DNA of 64,000 nt from Hypanus sabinus (GCF_030144855.1 NC_082717.1:65534001-65598000), one strand, 5' to 3'; counted from the first letter of the stretch, positions 17,461 through 35,311 are shown. The notes: generated by a model not told the origin, from the sequence alone. A program made the numbers and translations.

Positions 17461-18569
17461 ACTCTGGCATAATTGAGATTCAGAAGAAAAAGCAGAAAAA
17501 ATAAGCTTTATATGTAATTTATTTTACTGGACAAAATAATTGTTTAACTACTGTAGTTTCAAGTCAGATTTGCTTTAGAAATATATTTGCATGATTTGTT
17601 GTAATTAAAATTGTCTGAATGGTCATAAACATGTGAGAAGATATATTCAACAGATGTCATGGTGGGCAAGATGAAAACCTCTCTCCCACCAAACAGAACC
17701 AAAAGATCAAGGTTATTATTATTAACTTGGAAATATTATTACAGCTTGATTATTTTTTTCGATAGATGAAAACCATTCAAAGGACTTAATTTGATAATTT
17801 TGTGTAATTCCTGTTGAAATGGGATTATAGAGAAAGAGAGAGGGTGTTCTTAAACAGGCCTTTCAGCCCATCAAGTCTGCAATGACCATCAATCACAAAT
17901 TTGCACAAATTTTGCATGAATAATACCATTTTAATTTTTTCCCCACATTCTCAACTCACATTTGCTTCTCCAGTTTAAGAGCAATACAGTATACAGGGGC
18001 AAATTAACCACCAAACTGATATGGTTGTGTTCAGGTTGTTGTAGTTCAAAGTAAATCACTTGCAACTTTTGTTATGTAGCTAATGGAATTTTCAGATACA
18101 TTTTGAAATTTAGAATGTTTCCCCATTTAAGCTATGCAATAGCTAATGGGAGGCCAAACAAAATATTGTCAGGTGTAAGCATTTATTCAACATTTAAAAA
18201 CCAAATGAATTTTAAATGGATTATTTTCTGTTTTCTCTCACCCACTGAGCTCTTTCCACTTTGTATAAAACATCTGAGTGATGTTGTTAAGAGTACGTAG
18301 CTGTCTTATAGCTGCCAAAATGTTACAGTTCCTTTATTCAACAGCTGTGAATCTAATGAGGAGATAGTTATGTAAATAGCAAAAATAGTTCCAAATATGC
18401 TTTACGTTCAGAATTCCAGTGTAACTTTAACACCTCAATCTTTAAAAAAAGCAAATGTAGCAAAAAAAGCTTTCATTGTTATAATGAAAATTTAATTAGT
18501 GTTTTTAACAAAGCACACTTAGAAATCTTTTTATTTGATGCCAGTGGAAATGTTCTTACTTATTGCTTT

Positions 18570-21500
18570 AGAGTCACAGAAAACTGCAGCAGAGAAACAG
18601 ACCCTTGAGCCAATTGTGGTCTCTGCCCAACAGTCTAAACTGTCTAGTCCCATTGAGCTGCACCCGGACCATAGCCCTCCATACTCTTCCCATTCATGTA
18701 CGTATCCAAACTTCTCTTAAACTTTGAAATCAAATTTGCATCCACCCCTTGCACTTGGCAGCTCATTCAACACTCTCACCACCTTCTGAGTGAAGAAGTT
18801 TCCCCTCATGTTCCCCTGAAATATTTCACCTTTCAGTCGTAACCCATGGCCTCTAGTTGTAGTCCTCCCAACCTCAGTGGAGAGAGCCTGTTTGCATTTA
18901 CAGTATCTATACCCCTCATAATGTTATGTACCCCCATCAAATCTTCCCCCAGTCTTCCTAATTCTAGGGAATAAAGTTCTAACCTGTTCAGTCTTTCCTT
19001 ATATCTCAGGTCCTTCAGTCCCAGCAACATCCTTGTAAATTTTCTTTGAACTCTTTCAAACTTATTTACATCATTCCTATAAGTAGGTTACCAAAACTGC
19101 ACACAGTACTCCACATTAGGCCTTACCGATGTTTTATACAACTTCAACATAACATTTAAAGTTCTGGCAATTTATATATCAGTTTCTCTGTACATCAAAC
19201 CCTTTCAGCCTCTCACCATTTGAAAAATACCCATTTTTATATTTGTTTATACCAACTCCTGTACTCAATACTTTAATCACCAAAGGCCAATGTAACAAAA
19301 GCTTTCTTTATGACCCTATCTAACTGTGATGCCACTTTCAATGATTTATGGATCTGTATTCCCAGATCCCTTTGTTGTACCGCACTCCTCAGTACCCTAC
19401 TGTTCACTGTGTAAGACCTATGCTGGTTGATCTTCCCGTAGGGCAACACTTCACACTTGCCTGCATTAAATTCCATCTGCCATTTTTCAGCCCATTTATC
19501 CGGCAGGTCCAGATCCCGCTGCAAGCTTTGATAGTCTTCTTTGCCACCCACTACACCCCCAATTGTGGTGTCACCTGCAGATTTGCTGATCCAGATAACC
19601 ACATTATTATCCAGATCGTTGATATAAATGACAAACAACAATGGACCCAGCACCAGTTCCCATAGCACTCCACTACTCACAAGCCTCCAGTCAGAGAAGC
19701 AACTTTCTTCTACCTCTCTCTGGCTTCTCCCACATGGAGAATCCAATCTAATGTCTAATCCAATTTACTCCCTCATCTTGAGTGCCAAGTGACTGAACCT
19801 TCTTGACCAACCTCCCATGTGGGACCTTGTCAAATGCCTTGCCATGCCTTCATCAACAACTTTCCTGGTAACTTCCTTGAAAAAACTCTACAGAGTTGGT
19901 TAGCATGACCTACCACACATAAAGCAATGCTGACTATCCCAAATCAGTTCCTGTCTATCCAAATACTCATATATCTGGTCCCTTAGAACACCTTCCAATA
20001 ACTTTAACACTGCTGATGTCAGGCTCACTAGCCTATAATTTCCTGGTTTATTCTTAGAGCCTTTCTCAAACAACGGAACAACTTTAGCTGTCTTCCAATC
20101 CTACCTCACCAGTCGCTAAGGATGATTTTAATATCTCTGCTTGGGCCTTTGCAATTTCTGCACTTGCCTCCCACAGAGTCTGAGGAAACACTCTGTCAGG
20201 CCCTGGGGATTTGTCCACCTTGATTTGCCTCAAGACACAAAAACCTCTTTCTCTGTAATCTGTATAGAGTCCATGACTTCACTGCTGCTTTGCCTCACTT
20301 CTCTAGCCTCTGTGTCCATCTCCTGAGTAAATACAGATGCAAAAAATCCATTTAAGATCTCCCCCATCTCTTTTAGCTCTCTGCATAGATTACCATTCTG
20401 ATCTTCTGGAGGACCAATGTTGTCCCTTACAATGCTTTTGATGTTAACACACCTGTAGAAGCCCTTAGGATTCTCCTTCACCTTGTCTGCTAGGAGCAAT
20501 CTCATGCCTTCTTTTATCACTCCTGATCTGTTTCTTGTGTTCTCTTGCATTTCTTATGCTCAAGTACATTATTTGTTCCTACCTGTCTGTACTTGCAATG
20601 CACCTCCTTTTGTTTCTTAACTTGGATCTCAATATCTCTCAAAAACCAAGGTTCCCTAAACTTGTTTTCCTTCCTTTTTATTCTGACAAGAAGAAACAAA
20701 ATCTGTACTCACAAAATTTCACTTTTAAAGGCCTCCCACATACCAAATACATTTTTGCCAGGAAACAGCCTGCTCCAATCCACACTTGCCAGATCCCTTC
20801 TGATACCATCAAAATTGACCTTTCTTCAATTTAGAATCTCAACCCGAGGACCAGACCTATCCTTTTCCATAACTACCTTGAAACTAATTGCATTATGATC
20901 ACTAGATGTAAAGTGTTCCCCTACACAAACTTCTGTCACCTTCTCACTTCCTCATGGCATATCAAATGTTGTACACTGTCTCGTTGGCTCTTCTATGTAC
21001 TAATGAAGGAAACTATTCTAATCACATTTGACAAAGTCTATCTCATCTAGTCCTCTTACAGTATGGGAATCCCAGTCACTATATGGAAAGTTAAAATCAC
21101 CTACTATCACAACCTTGTGTTTCTTGCAACGGTTTGCAGCCTTTCTACAAATTTGTTCTCCTAAATCCTGTTGAGTGTGGTGAGGGCTATAATATACCCC
21201 ATTAACATGGTCATACCTTTCTTAATTCTCAGTTCCAACCATAAAGCGTCACTAGACGAGTTCCCCAGTCTATCCTGACTGAGTACTGCCATGACATTTT
21301 TGCTGAGTGGTAACACCACCTCTCATTTAATCCCTCCCGTTCTTATCACGTCTCAAACAACAGAAAACCAGAGTATTGAGCTGCCAGTCCTGCCCCTCTT
21401 GCAATCAAGTTTCACTAATGGCTACAATATCATAAATCCTTCTCCTGAGCTCCTACAAATCGTCTTGCATTGAAATTTACACAACTCGAGACATTAGTCC

Positions 21501-22260
21501 CACTGTGCTAAACCTTTTGATTCCTCACTTTGTCTGAGGTCTTAACAACGTGTCTTCACAACCACTGCATTATCTGTTCTGACACTCTGGTTCCCATCCC
21601 CCTGCAACTCTAGTTTAAACACCCCTCCCCCACTCCCCTCATGCAGTACGAGCTAACCTTCCCACCGGGATATTAGTGCCTCTCCAGTTAAGGTGGTGCA
21701 GGTCCCACTTTCACTTGAAGAAAGCCCAATGATCCAAAAATATGAAGCCCTCTCTCCTACACCAACTCCTTAGCCACATGTTAAACTGCATGATTTTCTT
21801 ATTTCTGGCCTCACTGGTATGTGCTACAGGTAGCAATCCTGAGATCACAACCCTGGAGGTCCTGTCCTTTAACTTAGGGGCACTGGAGTCCTCCTTACCT
21901 GCTCACATCTTGCAACAGGAGCATTCAACTATCCTGCCTAGCATCCTTACTGCTCTAACTGTGCAATTATAAATAAGGAAACAACAAAGAAACTGAAAAA
22001 AAATCTATCTCAGCTTTTCGCCTTCTTTCACTCAAGCCTCTTCTCGATGAAACCTCAAAGAGTTAAATCACCACTCCACAACAACGGTTGCTCCGCTTGC
22101 ACCTGCCTTATTTTAATTTGCCCTCTCTAATGAATCCCAATCTCTGATTGGCTGCTGTTCAAATGCCAAAACCCCCATGAAGCGCTGCTTTTTAACGCAT
22201 ACTCGCTGACCTGTGTGAGTCACTTTTCTCACTTCCGATCTCTGATTGGCCACTGTTCAT
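18570..22260 (-). mobile_element. Long CR1 LINE copy with internal deletions: putative 5' UTR, ORF1 SGNH-esterase remnant, ORF2 endonuclease and RT, 3' UTR
   Basis: Minus-strand translations: SRVVISGLLPVAHTSEARNKKIMQFNMWLRSWCRREGFIFLDHW (ORF1, about 21725-21858); VVIVGDFNFPYSDW (APE endonuclease, about 21070-21115); VKENPKGFYR; VLGPLLFVIYINDLD...KWQMEFNAGKCEVL (RT); LRYKERLNRLELYSLE. Many frameshifts. Confidence 0.92.
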
Positions 22261-23620: not shown

Positions 23621-23729
23621 TAATCTAATGTAAAGATGAGAAATCAAACATGTTTTAAGTTGCAGAGAAGAGAGAGAGAGAACAAAGGGAAGATCTCAGA
23701 CAGGATGGAAATAAACAGAATCCATAAAA

Positions 23730-24850
23730 CACAATAGAGTGATAGAGATGTACAGCATCTATGCCAACCATCATATCTACATATACAAATCCCATTTGCC
23801 TGCATTAATTCCATATTCCTCTCTATCCTGCTCATTCAAGTTTCTGTCCGGGTATCTCTTAAATGCTGTTACTGTTCATGCCTTCACATCCTCCTCTGGC
23901 AACTACTTTCAAATATTAATTACTCTTTGTGTGCAAGTTTTTTAGATCCCCTTTAAATCTCCCTTTCACCTTAAACCTACAGTATGTCCTCTAGTACTAG
24001 ACATCCCTACAAGGGTAATGTGGTAGTGCTTTTCCATTGTATCCAACAATGATAGGGGACTTGTGTGGGAGAGTTTTTAAACTGGAAAAGCTGTTGCGGT
24101 GGGGCACTTCCACTCTCTCGACCTCAAAAGTCCAGGTCCAATGATACAAGTAGACGTCACAAACTGAGTTCTTCCTGGCTTGCAGTAGATGACCATGACT
24201 ACTTCTGTGTCTTGCCATGCCCTTTGCTCTCCCCAAACAGAACTGCCTTCCTGGCCATTGGATCTCACTGCTGATCTCATCTACACAGTTGTCCAAATCA
24301 TGGGTAATAGATACTAGCTATGTGCCCTATCTGTGCCTCTCATAATTTTATATACTTCAATCTTGTCACCTCTCAGCCTTCTTTGCACTCGGAAAAACAG
24401 ATCAAGCCTATCCAATTTTCCTCATAACTCAACCTCTCCAATCCAAGCAACATCCTTGTGAATCATTTCTGCACGTCCTCCAATTTAGCTGTATCTTTTC
24501 TGTAGAGTGGCAAACAAATGCAGACTTACTCACATTTTATACAACTATAACATGATTTCTCAACTTTTGTAATCAGTGCTTCAGCCAATAAAGACAAGCA
24601 TGCTGTATGCCTCCTTTGCCAACCATGTTTCTGTATTGTTAGATTCTGGGAATTATGTATTCCCCCCCTCCCACCCCATGACTCTCTGTTCAACAACACT
24701 ACACAGGGCCCTGCCATTCACTTTATGCTGTGCCTTGGTTTAAATTCCCAAAATTAATCACTTTGAGTTGAATTCCATCTGCTATTCCTTTGCCCACCTT
24801 CACAGTTAATCTTTAACATTAGAAAACTTCTTCACTATCACTTTACAATC
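23730..24850 (-). mobile_element. Old CR1 LINE fragment interrupted by an unrelated insert of about 290 bp (about 24010-24300)
   Basis: CR1 motifs caagcaacatccttgtgaatcatttctgcac and gaattccatctgc. The sequence character changes abruptly across 24010-24300. Confidence 0.7.
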
Positions 24851-25629
24851 AAAGTTCATGAAAAATTCCCAAATACTTTTGATTTGTAGGGAATTGGGAA
24901 GTTGTTGAGAAGTAAAAACAAGTTCTGCAGGTGAAGAAAGTTGATAGTGGAAAGGGACTAGATAGGAAGAAGAGAAAGGCACTGAAATCTGAAAACTGGA
25001 AACCATCACAGTGGCAAAGGATATATAAAGTGTCATGTCTTTAAAGAGAAAAGACCGAACAAGGGAGGAAAAGGAGTCAAGGAAGGAAGAAATAATTTTG
25101 TTTGGAGAACTGTCACATTAGTTTGGGTTATGGATATTGGGGAGTAGGTGATACAAGATTTGGGAACTGCGAGACTGTGGACTGTTGAGAAGATATCCAG
25201 AAGAAATCAGGTCAGTACCTGTCTGAGAGACGGCAATCTGATGTTCAGTTGTTTGGTCCTGGTTCAGTGGGAACTACCTGAGAACTGGCATTCAGCCTCG
25301 TATGAGGTGGAAGTCAATTCCCACAGAGCATCACCACCTTTGTCAGTTCTGGTGTTAGTCTTTAGTGAGTGGAGTGCCATAATTTCAGAAGCAATAGGTT
25401 AGAATGAAAAAAGGCAATGTTAAAATTGAGATGTAAAATGTCATCAACCTGAAATGTTAACTTGATTTTTCTTTCTCCACAAGTACAATCTGAGCAAAAT
25501 CTCCTTTTATTTCATAATTCTCCATTGGCTGTTCTAGCACTGATTTTTTAAAAATTCCCTTTCTGTCATTCATTTTCCTCAAGTGATTGCTCTCCAGTTA
25601 GATCAATTACTGGAGCGAGCAAGGATTGG

Positions 25630-26340
25630 CAGTGACTTGATAGGCATGTAGGAGGCCTAGATCGAGTGGGTAGCCAGAGACCTTTTCCCAAGGCAGAAAT
25701 GGTTAATGCGAGGTTTTAAGGTGATTTATTTAAGGTTTTAAGAGCATGGGGGGAGGTAGGTTTTTACACAGAGAGTGGTGGGTGGGTGGGTGGAAGGCCT
25801 GCTGGGGGCATTGATAGAGGCAAATACATTAGAGACATTTAAGAACTTTTAAATAGGCATATGGGGGATAGAAAAAAGGAGGACTATGTAGGAGTAAAGG
25901 GTTAGATCAGGGGTTCACAACCTTTTTTTATGCCATAGGACAACTTCCCAATTTCCTACAAATCCAAAGTATTTGGGAATTCTTCAGGTGCTCTTTGTGA
26001 TCTTAGATAGTGAAGAAGTAGTCTAATGTTATAATATGTTAAAGATCGACTGGAAAAGTGGGGCAAAGGAATTGCAGATGGAATTTAACTCAGACAAGTG
26101 CAAAGTGATTAATTTAGGAAAATCAAACCAAGGTACAGCATAGAATGAGTGGCAGGGCCCTGCATAGCATTGTAGGACAGAGCCTTGGTTGGTGGGAGGG
26201 GGAAGGGGTACATAATTAAGCAAAGGGTCCATGGGCCCCAGGTTGGGAACCCCTGGGTTAGATTGAACTTAGAGTAGGTTAAAAGGTTGGCAGAACATCA
26301 CGGGCCAAAGGGCCTGTACTGTGCTATTATGTTTTATGTT
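25630..26340 (+). mobile_element. CR1 3' fragment hosting the hAT MITE
   Basis: tttttacacagagagtggtgggtg... through gggccaaagggcctgtactgtgctattatgttttatgtt. Continuous once the MITE and one TSD copy are removed. Confidence 0.75.
25908..26255. mobile_element. hAT (Charlie-like) non-autonomous element with captured internal sequence
   Basis: TIRs CAGGGGTTCACAACC (25908) and GGTTGGGAACCCCTG (ends 26255). Perfect 8-bp TSD GGTTAGAT at 25900-25907 and 26256-26263. Confidence 0.9.
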
Positions 26341-27766
26341 AACAAACCTTCAATGTCCTCTCTCCTACTGGACAGAAGAAACATAATTTATGTCACATCC
26401 TGGATTGCCTTGGTCTTGATGCTTCTGCTCCTCCCATGACTCTAAATCATACTTGTTTTGTCACTTTTCCCAGTTCTAATGAAAGATCATCAGCCTGAAA
26501 TACTAGTTTTGTTTCAATCTCCACAAATGCTGAATCCGCTGCTGAGTATTTCCAGCAGTTTTGTATGCCTACAATACATTCAGCTGTTCAGACTATGCTG
26601 ACTGTCTAGGTAGTAGAATCAGTTGTCCCACATTTTCCTGTCCTTATGCAACTTTATTCTCTCTCACACATGCCAATTATTTTCTCCTTGATTCTCTTAG
26701 TCATTCATCAACCCTGAGAGGTCATTTACAGCAACCCATTAACTTACCAATACATCTTTGGGCATGGAAGGAGCCCAGTACAGGTCATTAAGAGAACATG
26801 TAAACTCTGTACAAGCCACATTGGAGATGAACAACCTGGTACAATATAAGCTCTAATTTGATTCAATGAAAATCAAAGATGCTGGACATTTAAAACAAAA
26901 CTGAAAACTCTGGAAAAACAGCAAAGCTAGGCAGGATCTATGTCAACATTTCAGCCCTCTGACACTTAATCAGCAGTGTATCAAAAAATGGGAAAATATA
27001 AATGAGAAAAAATAACATTTAACCTCTTCTTATCTCTGCAACTTCTGTTGAAATTGGCTCTCAATGGCACTTGGTTGTAAAGGGCATAGGTTAACCAGAA
27101 ATTTCTCTTGGATATCTCACTTACATGTGGACATCAGTGGGAGTAGGATTAAGCATTGTAATATTTCCATCTCGATAGCCAGATAATTTTCAACATTTGC
27201 TACCAAAGGTCCACGTGAATTTTGGCTACGTTTGTATAGTATCTACAGAGCTATAATGACATCGTACATGTGGAAGGGAAGAACATCACTGAAGATGGAA
27301 AAAAGAACAAAAGTGAAGTATCTCGAAAGCTGATGAGTTTGGGAAACTTTATTCCTAAATAGAAATAAAATTCAGGCACTAGCTGTAGGTGTAAGATGGG
27401 CTGGAATATATAATATGGTGATTGAGAACTAACCCAGTCAGAGTAAGCCACTGAAATATCTATATTCATGAACTTCCTTTTTTGCTGTATCTAAGAACAT
27501 GGAGGAAATGTAAGTGGCAAGAAATGAAGGTAAAGCAATGCAAATCAAGTGAAATACAAGCAATGTAGATGTCACAGAAGTCAAACTATTATTCATACCC
27601 ACAATATTTAAGATATCTTGGTAATTGACAAATACTCGTAAGAGAGCAGGAATTTTATTTTAATAGTTGCTGAAGTTAACTATTAAAATAAAATACCTGC
27701 TCTCTTTTAATTTACTTCCAGTTCTGGGTTGAAGCCTTTGATATAACTCTGCTTTCTGTTTTTCAG

Positions 27767-27866
27767 GGAACAATAAAGAGAAGGAGGAAGCAATGATGCA
27801 AGAGTGGTTCGTGTTGGTGAACAAGAAGAATGCCCTGATAAGACGTCAAAATCAACTTTCACTTCT
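27767..27866 (+). CDS. EHBP1: EHBP1 coding exon (fourth from last), bMERB domain
   Basis: Acceptor ttctgtttttcag| and donor |gtaagt. Encodes (G)[32 protein letters not shown](L), matching vertebrate EHBP1 ...[28 protein letters not shown]. 100 nt, phase 1 to phase 2. Confidence 0.96.
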
Positions 27867-29329
27867 GTAAGTGCATTGAAGATTTGACAAATATTATTTA
27901 CATTGTCAGATTTTATTGTCCACTTTTCACTTTTATAGTAATAGTTACCTGAGAATTCTGAAATTCAAAATAACATTTTGGCATAACTCAGTAATGTAGT
28001 TATGCATTACCACATAAATGTATATATGTATAATTAATTCCTGATAGATCAGTAAGTTTATAATGCATTAAATTTTCCACCAATATTTGATTTCTCTATT
28101 TAAAGAGAATGAGAAAATAGTTAATAGAATAAATATGTTGGTCTATGGTTATGGATTTGTATTTCCACGAGAGTACATCAAGGGAGTATAAACAGTTACT
28201 TGGATTTCTCCTCATGCGCCAAGTTAAATATCCTAAAATTTCTTCAGTACGTTGATAAAGAAGAGTCATATAGCAGGAATTAAGGGAGAAAGGGGAACCT
28301 GGTAGCATTCAGAAGTGTCAATATTACTGAGGAATATAACTTGGGACAGAAATGAGGAAAAGACTTCCTAGGGTAGGGGGAGGGGTAGAGGTACATAAAT
28401 TATGAGGAATTGAACAGCTGGAGCTTAACAAGTAGAAGACCAAGTATTTAAAGAGCAGAATATTTTCAATAGCTTGTGGTAATTGGAGGCTTCTGCTCTT
28501 TTTAACTATAAACTGTGTTATATAACACCACCCCTTTGGCTCATCTAGACCAATCCACAATAATCATGAGAAGCTAGCAAAACTTAACAAGTTAGAGTCC
28601 ATCTGACCAGCAGCCTCTGCTATTTCTCTCCTTTGCCTTCACATTCCAGCCCTTCTAATAACTTGTTTTTTCTCTTGTATCTTCTTTCTCCTCCGAAGTC
28701 TCTCCAGCATTGATCCAGTTGGTGGGATATCAATCCCCTTGTCCTATCTATTCCAGTTGCAGTCAGCAGATCAGAAGGCTTCTCTTCGTAACTGTTGTTA
28801 TCTTTTGGTATCCTTAAAGTTTTTAACACCCTCCCCACCTCTTAATTCTCATCTACAGCAACATCATCTGAAAGCTGTGTGTCATGTTCTTTGTCGATCT
28901 GACAGCCAGCTTTATCTCACTATCAATTCTCTGGACTCCTCCAGTGTCTCTAAGTCATCCCATTGCTTATTTAAGTTTCATAAATAAACTAGCAGATTTT
29001 TTCCAACTGAGTATTGAGAAGATTAAAGTCATTATTCTCAACCAAAGGTACAAACCCTAGCTATTGCAGATTTCCTTTTCCTGGCAGCGCTCCAAGGTAG
29101 TTTTGAGTTGACCCCTTAAGCCATATATTCATTCAGCTACACTGACTGCCAACATTTGACTCAGTAGGATAACTAATAGGCAGGGAAAGAAGATGAAGAG
29201 GCAACTGATTGGATGTTTTCAGCTCCAGTGCTTTACTCCTGTAACTTCTTTCTCTAACTTCTCATAGACCTCCCACATCCTATGCATTGTAATCTAGAAG
29301 TCATCTGAACCTGCTGCCTCTGACTTAAT

Positions 29330-34180: not shown

Positions 34181-35311
34181 TCAGAATCAGGTTTTTTATC
34201 ACTGGCATGTGATGTGACATTTGTTAACTTAGCAGTAGCAGTTCAATGCAATACATAATCTAGCAGAGGGAAAAAAATAATAGTAATAGTAAATAAAATT
34301 AAATAGGATAATAAATAAGTAAATCAATTATGGTATATGTATATTGAATAGATTTTTTTAATGTGCAAAAACAGAAATACTGTATATTAAAAGAAAAAGG
34401 AGGTAGTATCCAAGGATTCAATGTCCATTTAGGAATTGGATGGCAGAGGGGAAGAAGCTGTTCCTGAATCGCTGAGTGTGTTCCTTCGGGTTTCTGTACC
34501 TCCTACCTAATGGTAACAGTGAGAAAAGGGCATGTCCTGGTTTCTGGAGGTCCTTAAAAATGGATGCTGCCTTTCTGAGACGCCGCTCCCTGAAGATGTC
34601 CTGGGTACTTTGTAGGCTCATACCCAAGATGGAGCTGACTAGATTTACAACCTTCTGCAGCTTCTTTCAGTCCCGTGCAGTAGCCCTTCCATACCAGACA
34701 GTGATGCAACCTATCAGAATGCTGTCCACGGTACAACTATAGAAGTTTTTCAGTGTGTTTGTTGACGTGCCAAATCTCTTCAAACTCCTAATGAAGTATA
34801 GCCATTGTCTTGCCTTCTTTATAACTACATCAATATGCTGGGACCAGGTTAGATCCTCAGAGATCTTTACACCCAGGAGCTTGAAACTGCTCACTCTCTT
34901 CTTCTAATCCCTGTATGAGGATTGGTATGTGTTCCTCTTACCCCTCCTGAAGTGCACAATCAGCACTTTCGTCTAACTCACGTTGTGTGCCAGGTTGTTG
35001 CTGTGGCACCACTCCACTAGTTGGCATATCTCACTCCTGTACACCCTCCCATCACCACCTGATTTTCTACCAACAATGGTTGTATTGTCAGCAAATTTAT
35101 AGATGGTATTTGAGCTATGCCTAGCCACACAGTCATGTGTATATAGAGAGTAGAGCAGTGGGCAAAGCACACACCCCTGAGGTGCGCCAGTGTTGGTCAG
35201 CAGCGAGGAGGATATGTTATCACCAATCCGCACAGATTGTGGTTTTCTGGTTAGGAAGTCAAGGATCCAATTGCAGAGGGAGGTACAGAGGCCCAGGTTC
35301 TGCAACTTTAT
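34181..35311 (-). mobile_element. Rex1/Babar-like LINE, 5'-truncated, least diverged copy in the window
   Basis: [21 protein letters not shown]...[12 protein letters not shown] (RT), FKLLGVKISEDLTWSQH and LLPLGRRYR...RFRNSFFPSAI. Tail (CTGATT)n. Direct repeat TCCATAA at 34174-34180 and 35312-35318 is a candidate TSD. Confidence 0.92.

What the first reader, a model, noticed from the sequence alone, without database searches (positions are those of the whole stretch)
24651..26263. hAT MITE carrying an inverted copy of DNA from 1 kb upstream (Pack-type or templated capture)
Seen: the element at 25908-26255 has hAT TIRs and a perfect 8-bp TSD (GGTTAGAT). Its interior (25940-26217) is a diverged reverse-complement copy of 24651-24905; for example caacttcccaatttcctacaaatccaaagtatttgggaat pairs with attcccaaatacttttgatttgtagggaattgggaagttg. 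The shared sequence includes a CR1 piece, the non-CR1-looking flank and an idiosyncratic G-rich patch. Removing it leaves a MITE shell of about 70 bp. Inference: local sequence was copied into the MITE, for example during double-strand-break or excision repair, like Pack-type elements in plants. This also makes an inverted repeat with arms of about 260 bp in EHBP1 pre-mRNA, 1.5 kb upstream of a coding exon, a possible dsRNA/ADAR substrate.
Basis: partly seen in the sequence, partly recalled or inferred. Interest (0 to 1): 0.72.

Follow-up and report, generated by a model that had tools for sequence, protein, structure and literature searches.

The report
hAT mini-transposon filled with neighbouring LINE DNA
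A 348-base dead cut-and-paste (hAT) transposon in an intron of a stingray-like EHBP1 gene has had its inside replaced by a 278-base piece of an old LINE retrotransposon, most likely copied backwards from the dead LINE copy 1 kb upstream; this is a tidy but ordinary case of "filler DNA".

Summary
At 25908-26255 there is a short element with 15/16 terminal inverted repeats starting CAGGGG. It is flanked by a perfect 8-bp duplication (GGTTAGAT) and sits in the 3' tail of a + strand CR1/L2-like LINE. This arrangement is unique in the window and did not arise in 40 shuffles.

Its interior (25940-26217) is the reverse complement of 24651-24905, with 207/255 aligned bases identical and four indels. 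Only a 32 + 38 nt shell remains.

The upstream arm belongs to a longer, dead minus-strand LINE copy. Both arms share three lesions that no working LINE should carry:
- an in-frame TAA stop;
- the same -2 frameshift;
- the same G-rich insertion, inside a motif of invariant length.

So the insert was copied as DNA from an already dead LINE copy, most simply the neighbour (about 0.6).

The "non-CR1 flank" claim is not supported. That 65-nt stretch is not detectably LINE, but it sits where the LINE's FADD box would lie.

A family-wide origin elsewhere could not be excluded. hAT filler DNA is already known in maize and Anolis. The predicted RNA duplex is strong but untested. Interest is low to moderate.

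The parts
25900..25907 (.). Left target-site duplication GGTTAGAT
   Evidence: Identical to 26256-26263. The host LINE tail is continuous when 25908-26263 is removed.
25908..25939 (+). Left shell of the hAT-type element (TIR 25908-25923, then a T-run and GCCATAGGAC, which pairs with the right subterminal GTCCATGGGC)
   Evidence: (I12)
25940..26217 (+). Filler: a 278-nt fragment of CR1/L2-like LINE ORF2 (sense on +), running from near the FADD box through DSEE, DQLEKW, QMEFN-KC-V-G and NQG/GRAL to the RDLG-VH motif. It carries stops and frameshifts.
   Evidence: tblastn and frameshift-aware alignment to RT fragments P0001-P0010; alignment to the in-window LINE at 19.3-19.7 kb
26218..26255 (+). 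Right shell of the hAT-type element (TIR 26240-26255)
26256..26263 (.). Right target-site duplication GGTTAGAT
24651..24905 (-). Upstream arm and putative donor: the same LINE ORF2 segment, sense on the minus strand, inside a longer dead LINE copy
23722..24930 (-). Dead, 5'-truncated CR1/L2-like LINE copy that contains the upstream arm. It is collinear with the near-full LINE at 18.5-21.7 kb and is interrupted by a nested 282-bp insertion at 24020-24301. The 5' end is uncertain (24840-24960).
   Evidence: blastn/tblastx collinearity; translation; tail alignment
25590..26345 (+). Host LINE 3' tail (last ~430 nt of a CR1/L2-like LINE) into which the hAT element inserted. LINE sequence is 25590-25907 and 26264-26345.
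   Evidence: Translation; tail alignment with the element and one TSD copy removed
26024..26026 (+). In-frame TAA stop shared with the upstream arm (24821-24819 on the minus strand). It aligns to a Gln codon of the intact LINE.
26135..26150 (+). 16-nt segment where 18 nt are expected: a -2 frameshift between NQG and GRAL. The upstream arm is identical in size and alignment column (24731-24716).
   Evidence: frameshift called at 26138 and at 24728, the same column
26190..26201 (+). G-rich 12-mer GGTGGGAGGGGG, an insertion inside the RDLG-xx-VH motif. It is shared with the upstream arm (reverse complement of 24664-24675).
   Evidence: Motif length is invariant in reference LINEs.
27763..27867 (+). 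Context: EHBP1 bMERB-domain coding exon. The element lies in the intron upstream of it.

Best explanation
A non-autonomous hAT-type transposon sits in the 3' tail of a LINE, inside an intron of an EHBP1-like gene. Only its ends survive (32 + 38 nt). Everything between them is filler DNA: 278 nt of the reverse-transcriptase region of a CR1/L2-like LINE. The filler was copied as DNA from a LINE copy that was already dead, most simply the one 1 kb upstream (24651-24905), and it was laid down in inverted orientation. The most likely mechanism is repair of the double-strand gap left by hAT excision. Synthesis first copies the element's ends from the sister chromatid, then switches to a nearby ectopic template, and the two ends are re-joined. 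This is 'abortive gap repair' or filler DNA, as in Ds-like and hobo derivatives. Shown: the anatomy, the LINE identity of the filler, the shared lesions, and the direction of copying (the upstream copy continues as LINE beyond the arm). Inferred: the repair mechanism, and that the neighbour rather than an unseen sibling is the donor. Also inferred is whether capture happened at this very site (about 0.35) or at a nearby site followed by a short hAT hop to 25908 (about 0.25). A by-product is an imperfect inverted repeat of about 260 nt in the pre-mRNA.
For: The TIR/TSD anatomy is unique and non-random. The host LINE tail is continuous once the element and one TSD copy are removed. The filler is LINE ORF2 (tblastn E 7e-9 for the insert and 2.6e-12 for the upstream copy; frameshift-aware alignments). 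The upstream arm runs on into LINE sequence for about 0.9 kb to the LINE 3' end, so it is the more complete copy and the insert is a sub-fragment. Three lesions are shared by both arms. They are absent from the intact in-window LINE ORF (19276-19746) and from RT fragments P0001-P0010: the TAA stop at 26024 / 24821, the -2 frameshift at the same alignment column, and the complex G-rich insertion in RDLG-VH. The two affected intervals have fixed length in every reference, including 7 distant metagenome LINEs (26 aa and 2 aa). The private lesions fit divergence after copying: two 10-nt deletions and a -2 in the upstream arm, a +1 in the insert. No other copy of this LINE subfamily or of the TIR exists in the 64 kb. 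hAT elements with filler DNA that includes other TEs are documented (PMC3260210, PMC3014272).
Against: No genome-wide search was possible, so a closer donor elsewhere, or many copies of the same composite element, cannot be excluded. The arms differ at 19% of aligned sites (K2P 0.22), yet the TSD is 8/8 and the TIRs 15/16. P(<=1 mismatch in 24 pairs) is about 0.05 if all are the same age, which argues mildly against capture at this exact site after insertion. Identity along the arms is patchy (65-95% per 40 nt), so some gene conversion between the arms is possible and could inflate the shared features. Junction microhomology is minimal: 2 nt (AC) on the left and none evident on the right.
Confidence: 0.6

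Rival explanations
1. This is a family-level composite. A hAT MITE family acquired its LINE-derived interior once, elsewhere in the genome, then amplified, and this copy landed by chance 1 kb from a LINE copy of the same lineage. The shared lesions would then be features of a non-autonomous (dead but trans-mobilised) LINE lineage, present in many copies.
For: The TSD and TIRs look younger than the arm divergence, as expected if the composite transposed here after capture. Unchecked notes from the same genome describe several many-copy DNA transposon families carrying captured cargo (s1-213484, s1-228281, s1-191519).
Against: It requires a LINE lineage that spread despite a stop codon, a frameshift and an insertion in ORF2. 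No second copy of the TIR, of the composite or of this LINE subfamily occurs in 64 kb. A word search with the insert-spanning antisense ORF found nothing, though that database hardly covers this genome.
Confidence: 0.3
2. The similarity is secondary. The insert came from an unrelated LINE copy of the same family, and later gene conversion between the two inverted arms 1 kb apart transferred the shared lesions.
For: Patchy identity along the arms (95%, 65%, 77%, 93%, 87%, 78%, 75% per 40 nt).
Against: The three shared lesions are spread over 180 nt and lie partly in the less similar blocks. Conversion tracts covering all of them, while leaving 19% divergence overall, is not parsimonious.
Confidence: 0.06
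3. This is not a transposon-linked event. A local inverted duplication happened to be bounded by TIR-like and TSD-like sequence, or a LINE retrotransposed into a MITE.
For: None specific.
Against: The TIR+TSD configuration is absent from 40 shuffles. The ends start CAGGGG and carry an 8-bp TSD, as in hAT. The insert is an internal LINE fragment without the LINE 3' end, so it is not a retrotransposition product.
Confidence: 0.04

Closest known systems
Ds-like (Ds-l4) elements of maize and other internally replaced Ac/Ds derivatives (hAT superfamily), explained by abortive gap repair with filler DNA
   Same: hAT termini are retained. [quoted passage not shown] The TSD is 8 bp.
   Different: This is a vertebrate (stingray-like) element with only 70 nt of shell. 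The donor candidate lies 1 kb away in inverted orientation, whereas the identified maize donors were on other chromosomes. Copy number here is unknown.
Non-autonomous hobo/hAT elements of Anolis carolinensis carrying extraneous DNA
   Same: [quoted passage not shown]
   Different: Those are long, amplified families. Here there is a single 348-bp copy with a short cargo and no evidence of amplification.
Pack-MULEs / Pack-type transduplication in plants
   Same: A TIR element carrying a copied piece of genomic DNA between its ends.
   Different: Pack elements are defined by captured host gene fragments and belong to Mutator (9-bp TSD, long TIRs). Here the cargo is a dead LINE fragment, the shell is hAT-like, and no expression or amplification of the cargo is shown.
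Intronic inverted Alu/SINE pairs as dsRNA/ADAR substrates in mammals
   Same: Two inverted, roughly 80%-identical repeat copies of 250-300 nt lie about 1 kb apart in an intron. The predicted long imperfect duplex has dG -315 kcal/mol, against -116 for shuffled sequence.
   Different: The pair arose by DNA-level copying into a transposon, not by two independent insertions. Editing was not tested.

Membership tests
hAT superfamily, non-autonomous element | 8-bp target-site duplication | tested here: met
   GGTTAGAT on both sides, 8/8. The host LINE tail is continuous after removal.
hAT superfamily, non-autonomous element | Short TIRs (about 10-25 bp) beginning 5'-CAG / YARNG | tested here: met
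   CAGGGGTTC[A/C]CAACCT, 15/16 complementary. The resemblance to mammalian hAT-Charlie MITE ends is from memory only.
hAT superfamily, non-autonomous element | Target consensus nTnnnnAn | tested here: inconclusive
   GGTTAGAT has the A at position 7 but G at position 2. That is a half match on either strand (read directly from the sequence).
hAT superfamily, non-autonomous element | Termini shared with an autonomous element encoding a hAT transposase | not testable with these tools
   No genome-wide search was available. No second copy of the TIR occurs in the window.
MITE (as a family concept) | Many homogeneous copies in the genome | not testable with these tools
There is one copy in 64 kb.
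Filler-DNA / abortive gap repair derivative | Both termini kept, interior replaced by DNA unrelated to the transposon | tested here: met
   A 32 + 38 nt shell, with the interior being LINE ORF2.
Filler-DNA / abortive gap repair derivative | Identifiable template for the filler | tested here: inconclusive
   The neighbouring dead LINE copy shares three post-mortem lesions, but rival donors elsewhere could not be searched.
Filler-DNA / abortive gap repair derivative | Microhomology at the junctions | tested here: inconclusive
   A possible 2-nt AC overlap at the left junction and none evident at the right. About 19% later divergence blurs this.
Pack-type (transduplicating) element | Cargo is a host gene fragment (exons/introns) | tested here: not met
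   The cargo is a decayed LINE RT fragment.
CR1/L2-like LINE (identity of the cargo) | ORF2 motifs downstream of the FADD box, in order (DSEE, DQLEKW, WQMEFN, KCxV..FG, NQG, NGRAL, EQRDLG) | tested here: met
   for both arms. The FADD box itself is not recognisable.
ADAR/dsRNA substrate | Long intramolecular duplex in a transcript | tested here: met
   In silico only: 221 intermolecular pairs, helices up to 25 bp, dG -315.5 against -116 +/- 5. The intronic position is inferred from the bMERB exon.
ADAR/dsRNA substrate | Clustered A-to-G mismatches in RNA reads | not testable with these tools

The most novel reading that the evidence does not exclude
The element is a MITE 'caught at birth'. A longer hAT element at this exact site was excised, and the gap was repaired with a fold-back template switch to the dead LINE 1 kb away. 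That would create a new 348-bp composite in situ, still sitting next to its template. It would be a rare vertebrate case where the donor, the product and the site of abortive gap repair are all preserved. It would also create a roughly 260-bp intronic dsRNA in EHBP1.
Probability: 0.33. Interest if true: 0.45.

Novelty: new member of a known kind. Interest (0 to 1): 0.3.

Why it matters
If the neighbour is the template, this locus preserves the shell, the filler and the donor of a transposon gap-repair event in a cartilaginous fish. It would illustrate how short non-autonomous hAT elements with foreign interiors arise, and how they scatter LINE fragments. It also shows a way to tell DNA-level copying from independent retrotransposition within a single window: lesions that no active LINE could carry, shared by both copies. 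The practical consequence is modest, namely an intronic inverted repeat that could form dsRNA. The phenomenon is already described in plants and lizards, so nothing here challenges current understanding.

Tried and rejected

3. A word search with the 67-aa antisense ORF spanning the right shell/insert junction (26032-26232) was meant to find other copies of the composite. It returned no candidate. This is uninformative, because the database hardly covers this genome.

4. A word search with the intact in-window LINE ORF gave 56 RT fragments. They were useful as protein references only.

5. A metagenome scan with an alignment of those proteins gave 80 LINE loci at 43-57% protein identity. They are too distant at DNA level. 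I used them only to show that motif spacing is invariant.

6. I tested whether the 5' 65 nt of the arms, or the sequence beyond 24905, is LINE. Protein-level and DNA-level scores are within the shuffle null. A 14/23 collinear match to the LLFVIYIN region just beyond the boundary is suggestive only.

7. A '-1 frameshift' between DSEE and DQLEKW was considered as a fourth shared lesion. I dropped it because the upstream arm's 10/11-nt deletion covers the site, so a shared origin is no more parsimonious than an independent one.

8. Twin-priming LINE inversion was rejected. The upstream LINE has its own 3' end, and the insert lacks one.

9. Earlier-findings look-ups by sequence and by relatives were blank.

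Full report
**What is there**

The sequence at 25900-26263 reads as follows:
- an 8-bp direct repeat, GGTTAGAT;
- a 16-nt terminal repeat starting CAGGGG;
- 316 nt of interior;
- the complementary terminal repeat (15/16);
- GGTTAGAT again.

A scan of all 64 kb for a perfect 8-mer duplication flanking a >=15/16 inverted repeat finds only this site, and none in 40 block-shuffled windows. No other copy of the terminal repeat exists in the window, even allowing 3 mismatches.

The element sits in the last ~430 nt of a + strand CR1/L2-like LINE. With 25908-26263 removed, that LINE tail runs on without loss or gain, collinear with two other LINE tails in the window. So this is a real insertion with a real target duplication. 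An 8-bp TSD and CAG-initiated short TIRs are the hallmarks of hAT elements.

**The inverted copy**

The interior 25940-26217 matches the reverse complement of 24651-24905 (BLASTN E 7e-52):
- 207 of 255 aligned bases are identical (K2P 0.22);
- there are four internal indels, of 10, 1, 10 and 2 nt;
- identity is patchy, 65-95% per 40 nt;
- homology stops exactly at the two shell/insert junctions, leaving 32 nt of shell on the left and 38 nt on the right.

The two shell pieces are themselves partly palindromic beyond the 16-nt TIR (GCCATAGGAC against GTCCATGGGC).

**What the shared sequence is**

The upstream arm is not an isolated piece. On the minus strand, 23722 to about 24905 reads as the C-terminal part of a CR1/L2-like LINE ORF2, followed by its 3' tail. 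It is collinear with a near-full-length LINE on the minus strand at 18.5-21.7 kb. A nested 282-bp insertion interrupts it.

RT fragments retrieved with the intact in-window ORF 19276-19746 align to both arms. A frameshift-aware protein-to-DNA alignment shows the ORF2 motifs in order: DSEE, DQLEKW, WQMEFN, KC-V-G, NQG, GRAL, EQRDLG, VH. The insert is thus an internal LINE fragment, sense on the + strand, without a LINE 3' end. It cannot be a retrotransposition product.

It does have the length and position expected for the IND...FADD...DSEE stretch. The 23 nt beyond the boundary in the upstream copy match the LLFVIYIN codons of the in-window LINE at 14/23.

**Evidence on the donor**

The useful test within one window is whether the two arms share mutations that no active LINE could carry. 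They share three:
1. A TAA aligned to a Gln codon six bases after DSEE, in frame and with no intervening indel (26024-26026; 24821-24819).
2. A 16-nt segment where 18 nt are required between NQG and GRAL. This is the same -2 shift, and the aligner calls it at the same column (26138 and 24728).
3. A complex G-rich insertion containing the identical 12-mer GGTGGGAGGGGG, inside the RDLG-xx-VH motif.

In every reference, the interval KC...QRDLG is 26 residues and RDLG...VH is 2 residues. The references are the intact in-window ORF, P0001-P0010, and 7 distant LINEs from metagenome contigs.

Private lesions are distributed as expected after a split: two 10-nt deletions and a -2 in the upstream arm, and a +1 in the insert.

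The common ancestor of the arms was therefore already a dead LINE copy, and one arm is a DNA-level copy of the other or of a close sibling. The upstream copy continues as LINE for about 0.9 kb beyond the arm, so it is the template type and the insert is the copy. A fourth candidate, a -1 shift between DSEE and DQLEKW, was dropped because the site is covered by a deletion in the upstream arm.

**Mechanism**

The anatomy is short intact ends with an interior replaced by nearby DNA in inverted orientation. That is what abortive gap repair with template switching produces after hAT excision. hAT elements with filler DNA, including pieces of other TEs, are documented in maize (PMC3260210) and Anolis (PMC3014272).

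The steps themselves are inferred: excision, end copying from the sister chromatid, a switch to the LINE 1 kb away, and re-joining. Junction microhomology is at best 2 nt on the left.

One observation fits in-situ capture poorly. With 19% divergence between the arms, a perfect TSD and 15/16 TIRs have a probability of about 0.05 if everything is the same age. A short hAT hop after capture at a nearby site would explain this. So would a family-level origin.

**What could not be done**

- A word search with the ORF spanning the right junction found nothing.
- The metagenome scan returned only distant LINEs.
- Earlier-findings look-ups by sequence and by relatives were blank.

Unchecked notes on other windows of this stingray-like genome describe several DNA transposon families with captured cargo, some in many copies. 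This keeps the family-level rival alive. I neither encountered nor filled any N stretch, and I saw no contig that I took for human.

**Context and consequence**

The open frame at 27742-27867 (+) is a bMERB-domain exon, closest to human EHBP1. It matches profile positions 31-62 of 134, so an upstream coding exon must exist and the element is intronic (an inference).

On the pre-mRNA the two arms are predicted to pair over 221 of 255 positions, with helices up to 25 bp. The cofold dG is -315.5 kcal/mol, against -116 +/- 5 for shuffled partners. This makes a plausible dsRNA, comparable to inverted SINE pairs, but nothing shows that it forms or is edited.

**Verdict**

Capture of foreign DNA by a hAT shell is clear. 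The neighbouring LINE is the best donor candidate on the strength of shared post-mortem lesions (about 0.6, including a possible short hop). A family-level origin elsewhere stands at about 0.3.
- This is a new member of a known kind, hAT filler-DNA derivatives. It has modest interest, chiefly as a possible case where template and product are both preserved.

Noticed in passing
window 24013-24308: A 282-bp nested insertion (24020-24301) interrupts the upstream LINE copy. It is flanked by 7-bp direct repeats GGGTAAT (24013-24019 and 24302-24308). It accounts for the ~286-nt excess relative to the in-window reference LINE. It has no poly-A or TIR that I recognised, and its identity is unknown.
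   Followed up: partly
window 18500-21700, minus strand: A near-full-length CR1/L2-like LINE with endonuclease and RT regions. It has many stops, but a 157-aa intact stretch remains (19276-19746). I used it as the in-window reference. It belongs to a different subfamily from the arms (57-67% DNA identity).
   Followed up: partly
window 25436-25482, 26490-26530, 26942-26967: Three short copies of a motif (…CCTGAAATGTTAAC…TCTCCACAA…) appear as repeats D4 and I8. They are probably fragments of another abundant repeat family of this genome.
   Followed up: no
window 25940-26217 vs 24651-24905: Identity between the arms is patchy: 95%, 65%, 77%, 93%, 87%, 78%, 75% in successive 40-column blocks. 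The transition:transversion ratio is 1:1. This could reflect partial gene conversion between the inverted arms, or local misalignment.
   Followed up: partly
window 171-1109 (+), 34649-35311 (-), 44927-45079 (+), 49817-50053 (-): Further RT-coding remnants of other LINE/retroelement families, detected by tblastn with the RT fragments. None is close to the arms.
   Followed up: no
window about 4030-4260: A run of N (400 in the window; it shows up as X in ORFs 3946-4339). It is an assembly gap or masked stretch. I left it untouched.
   Followed up: no
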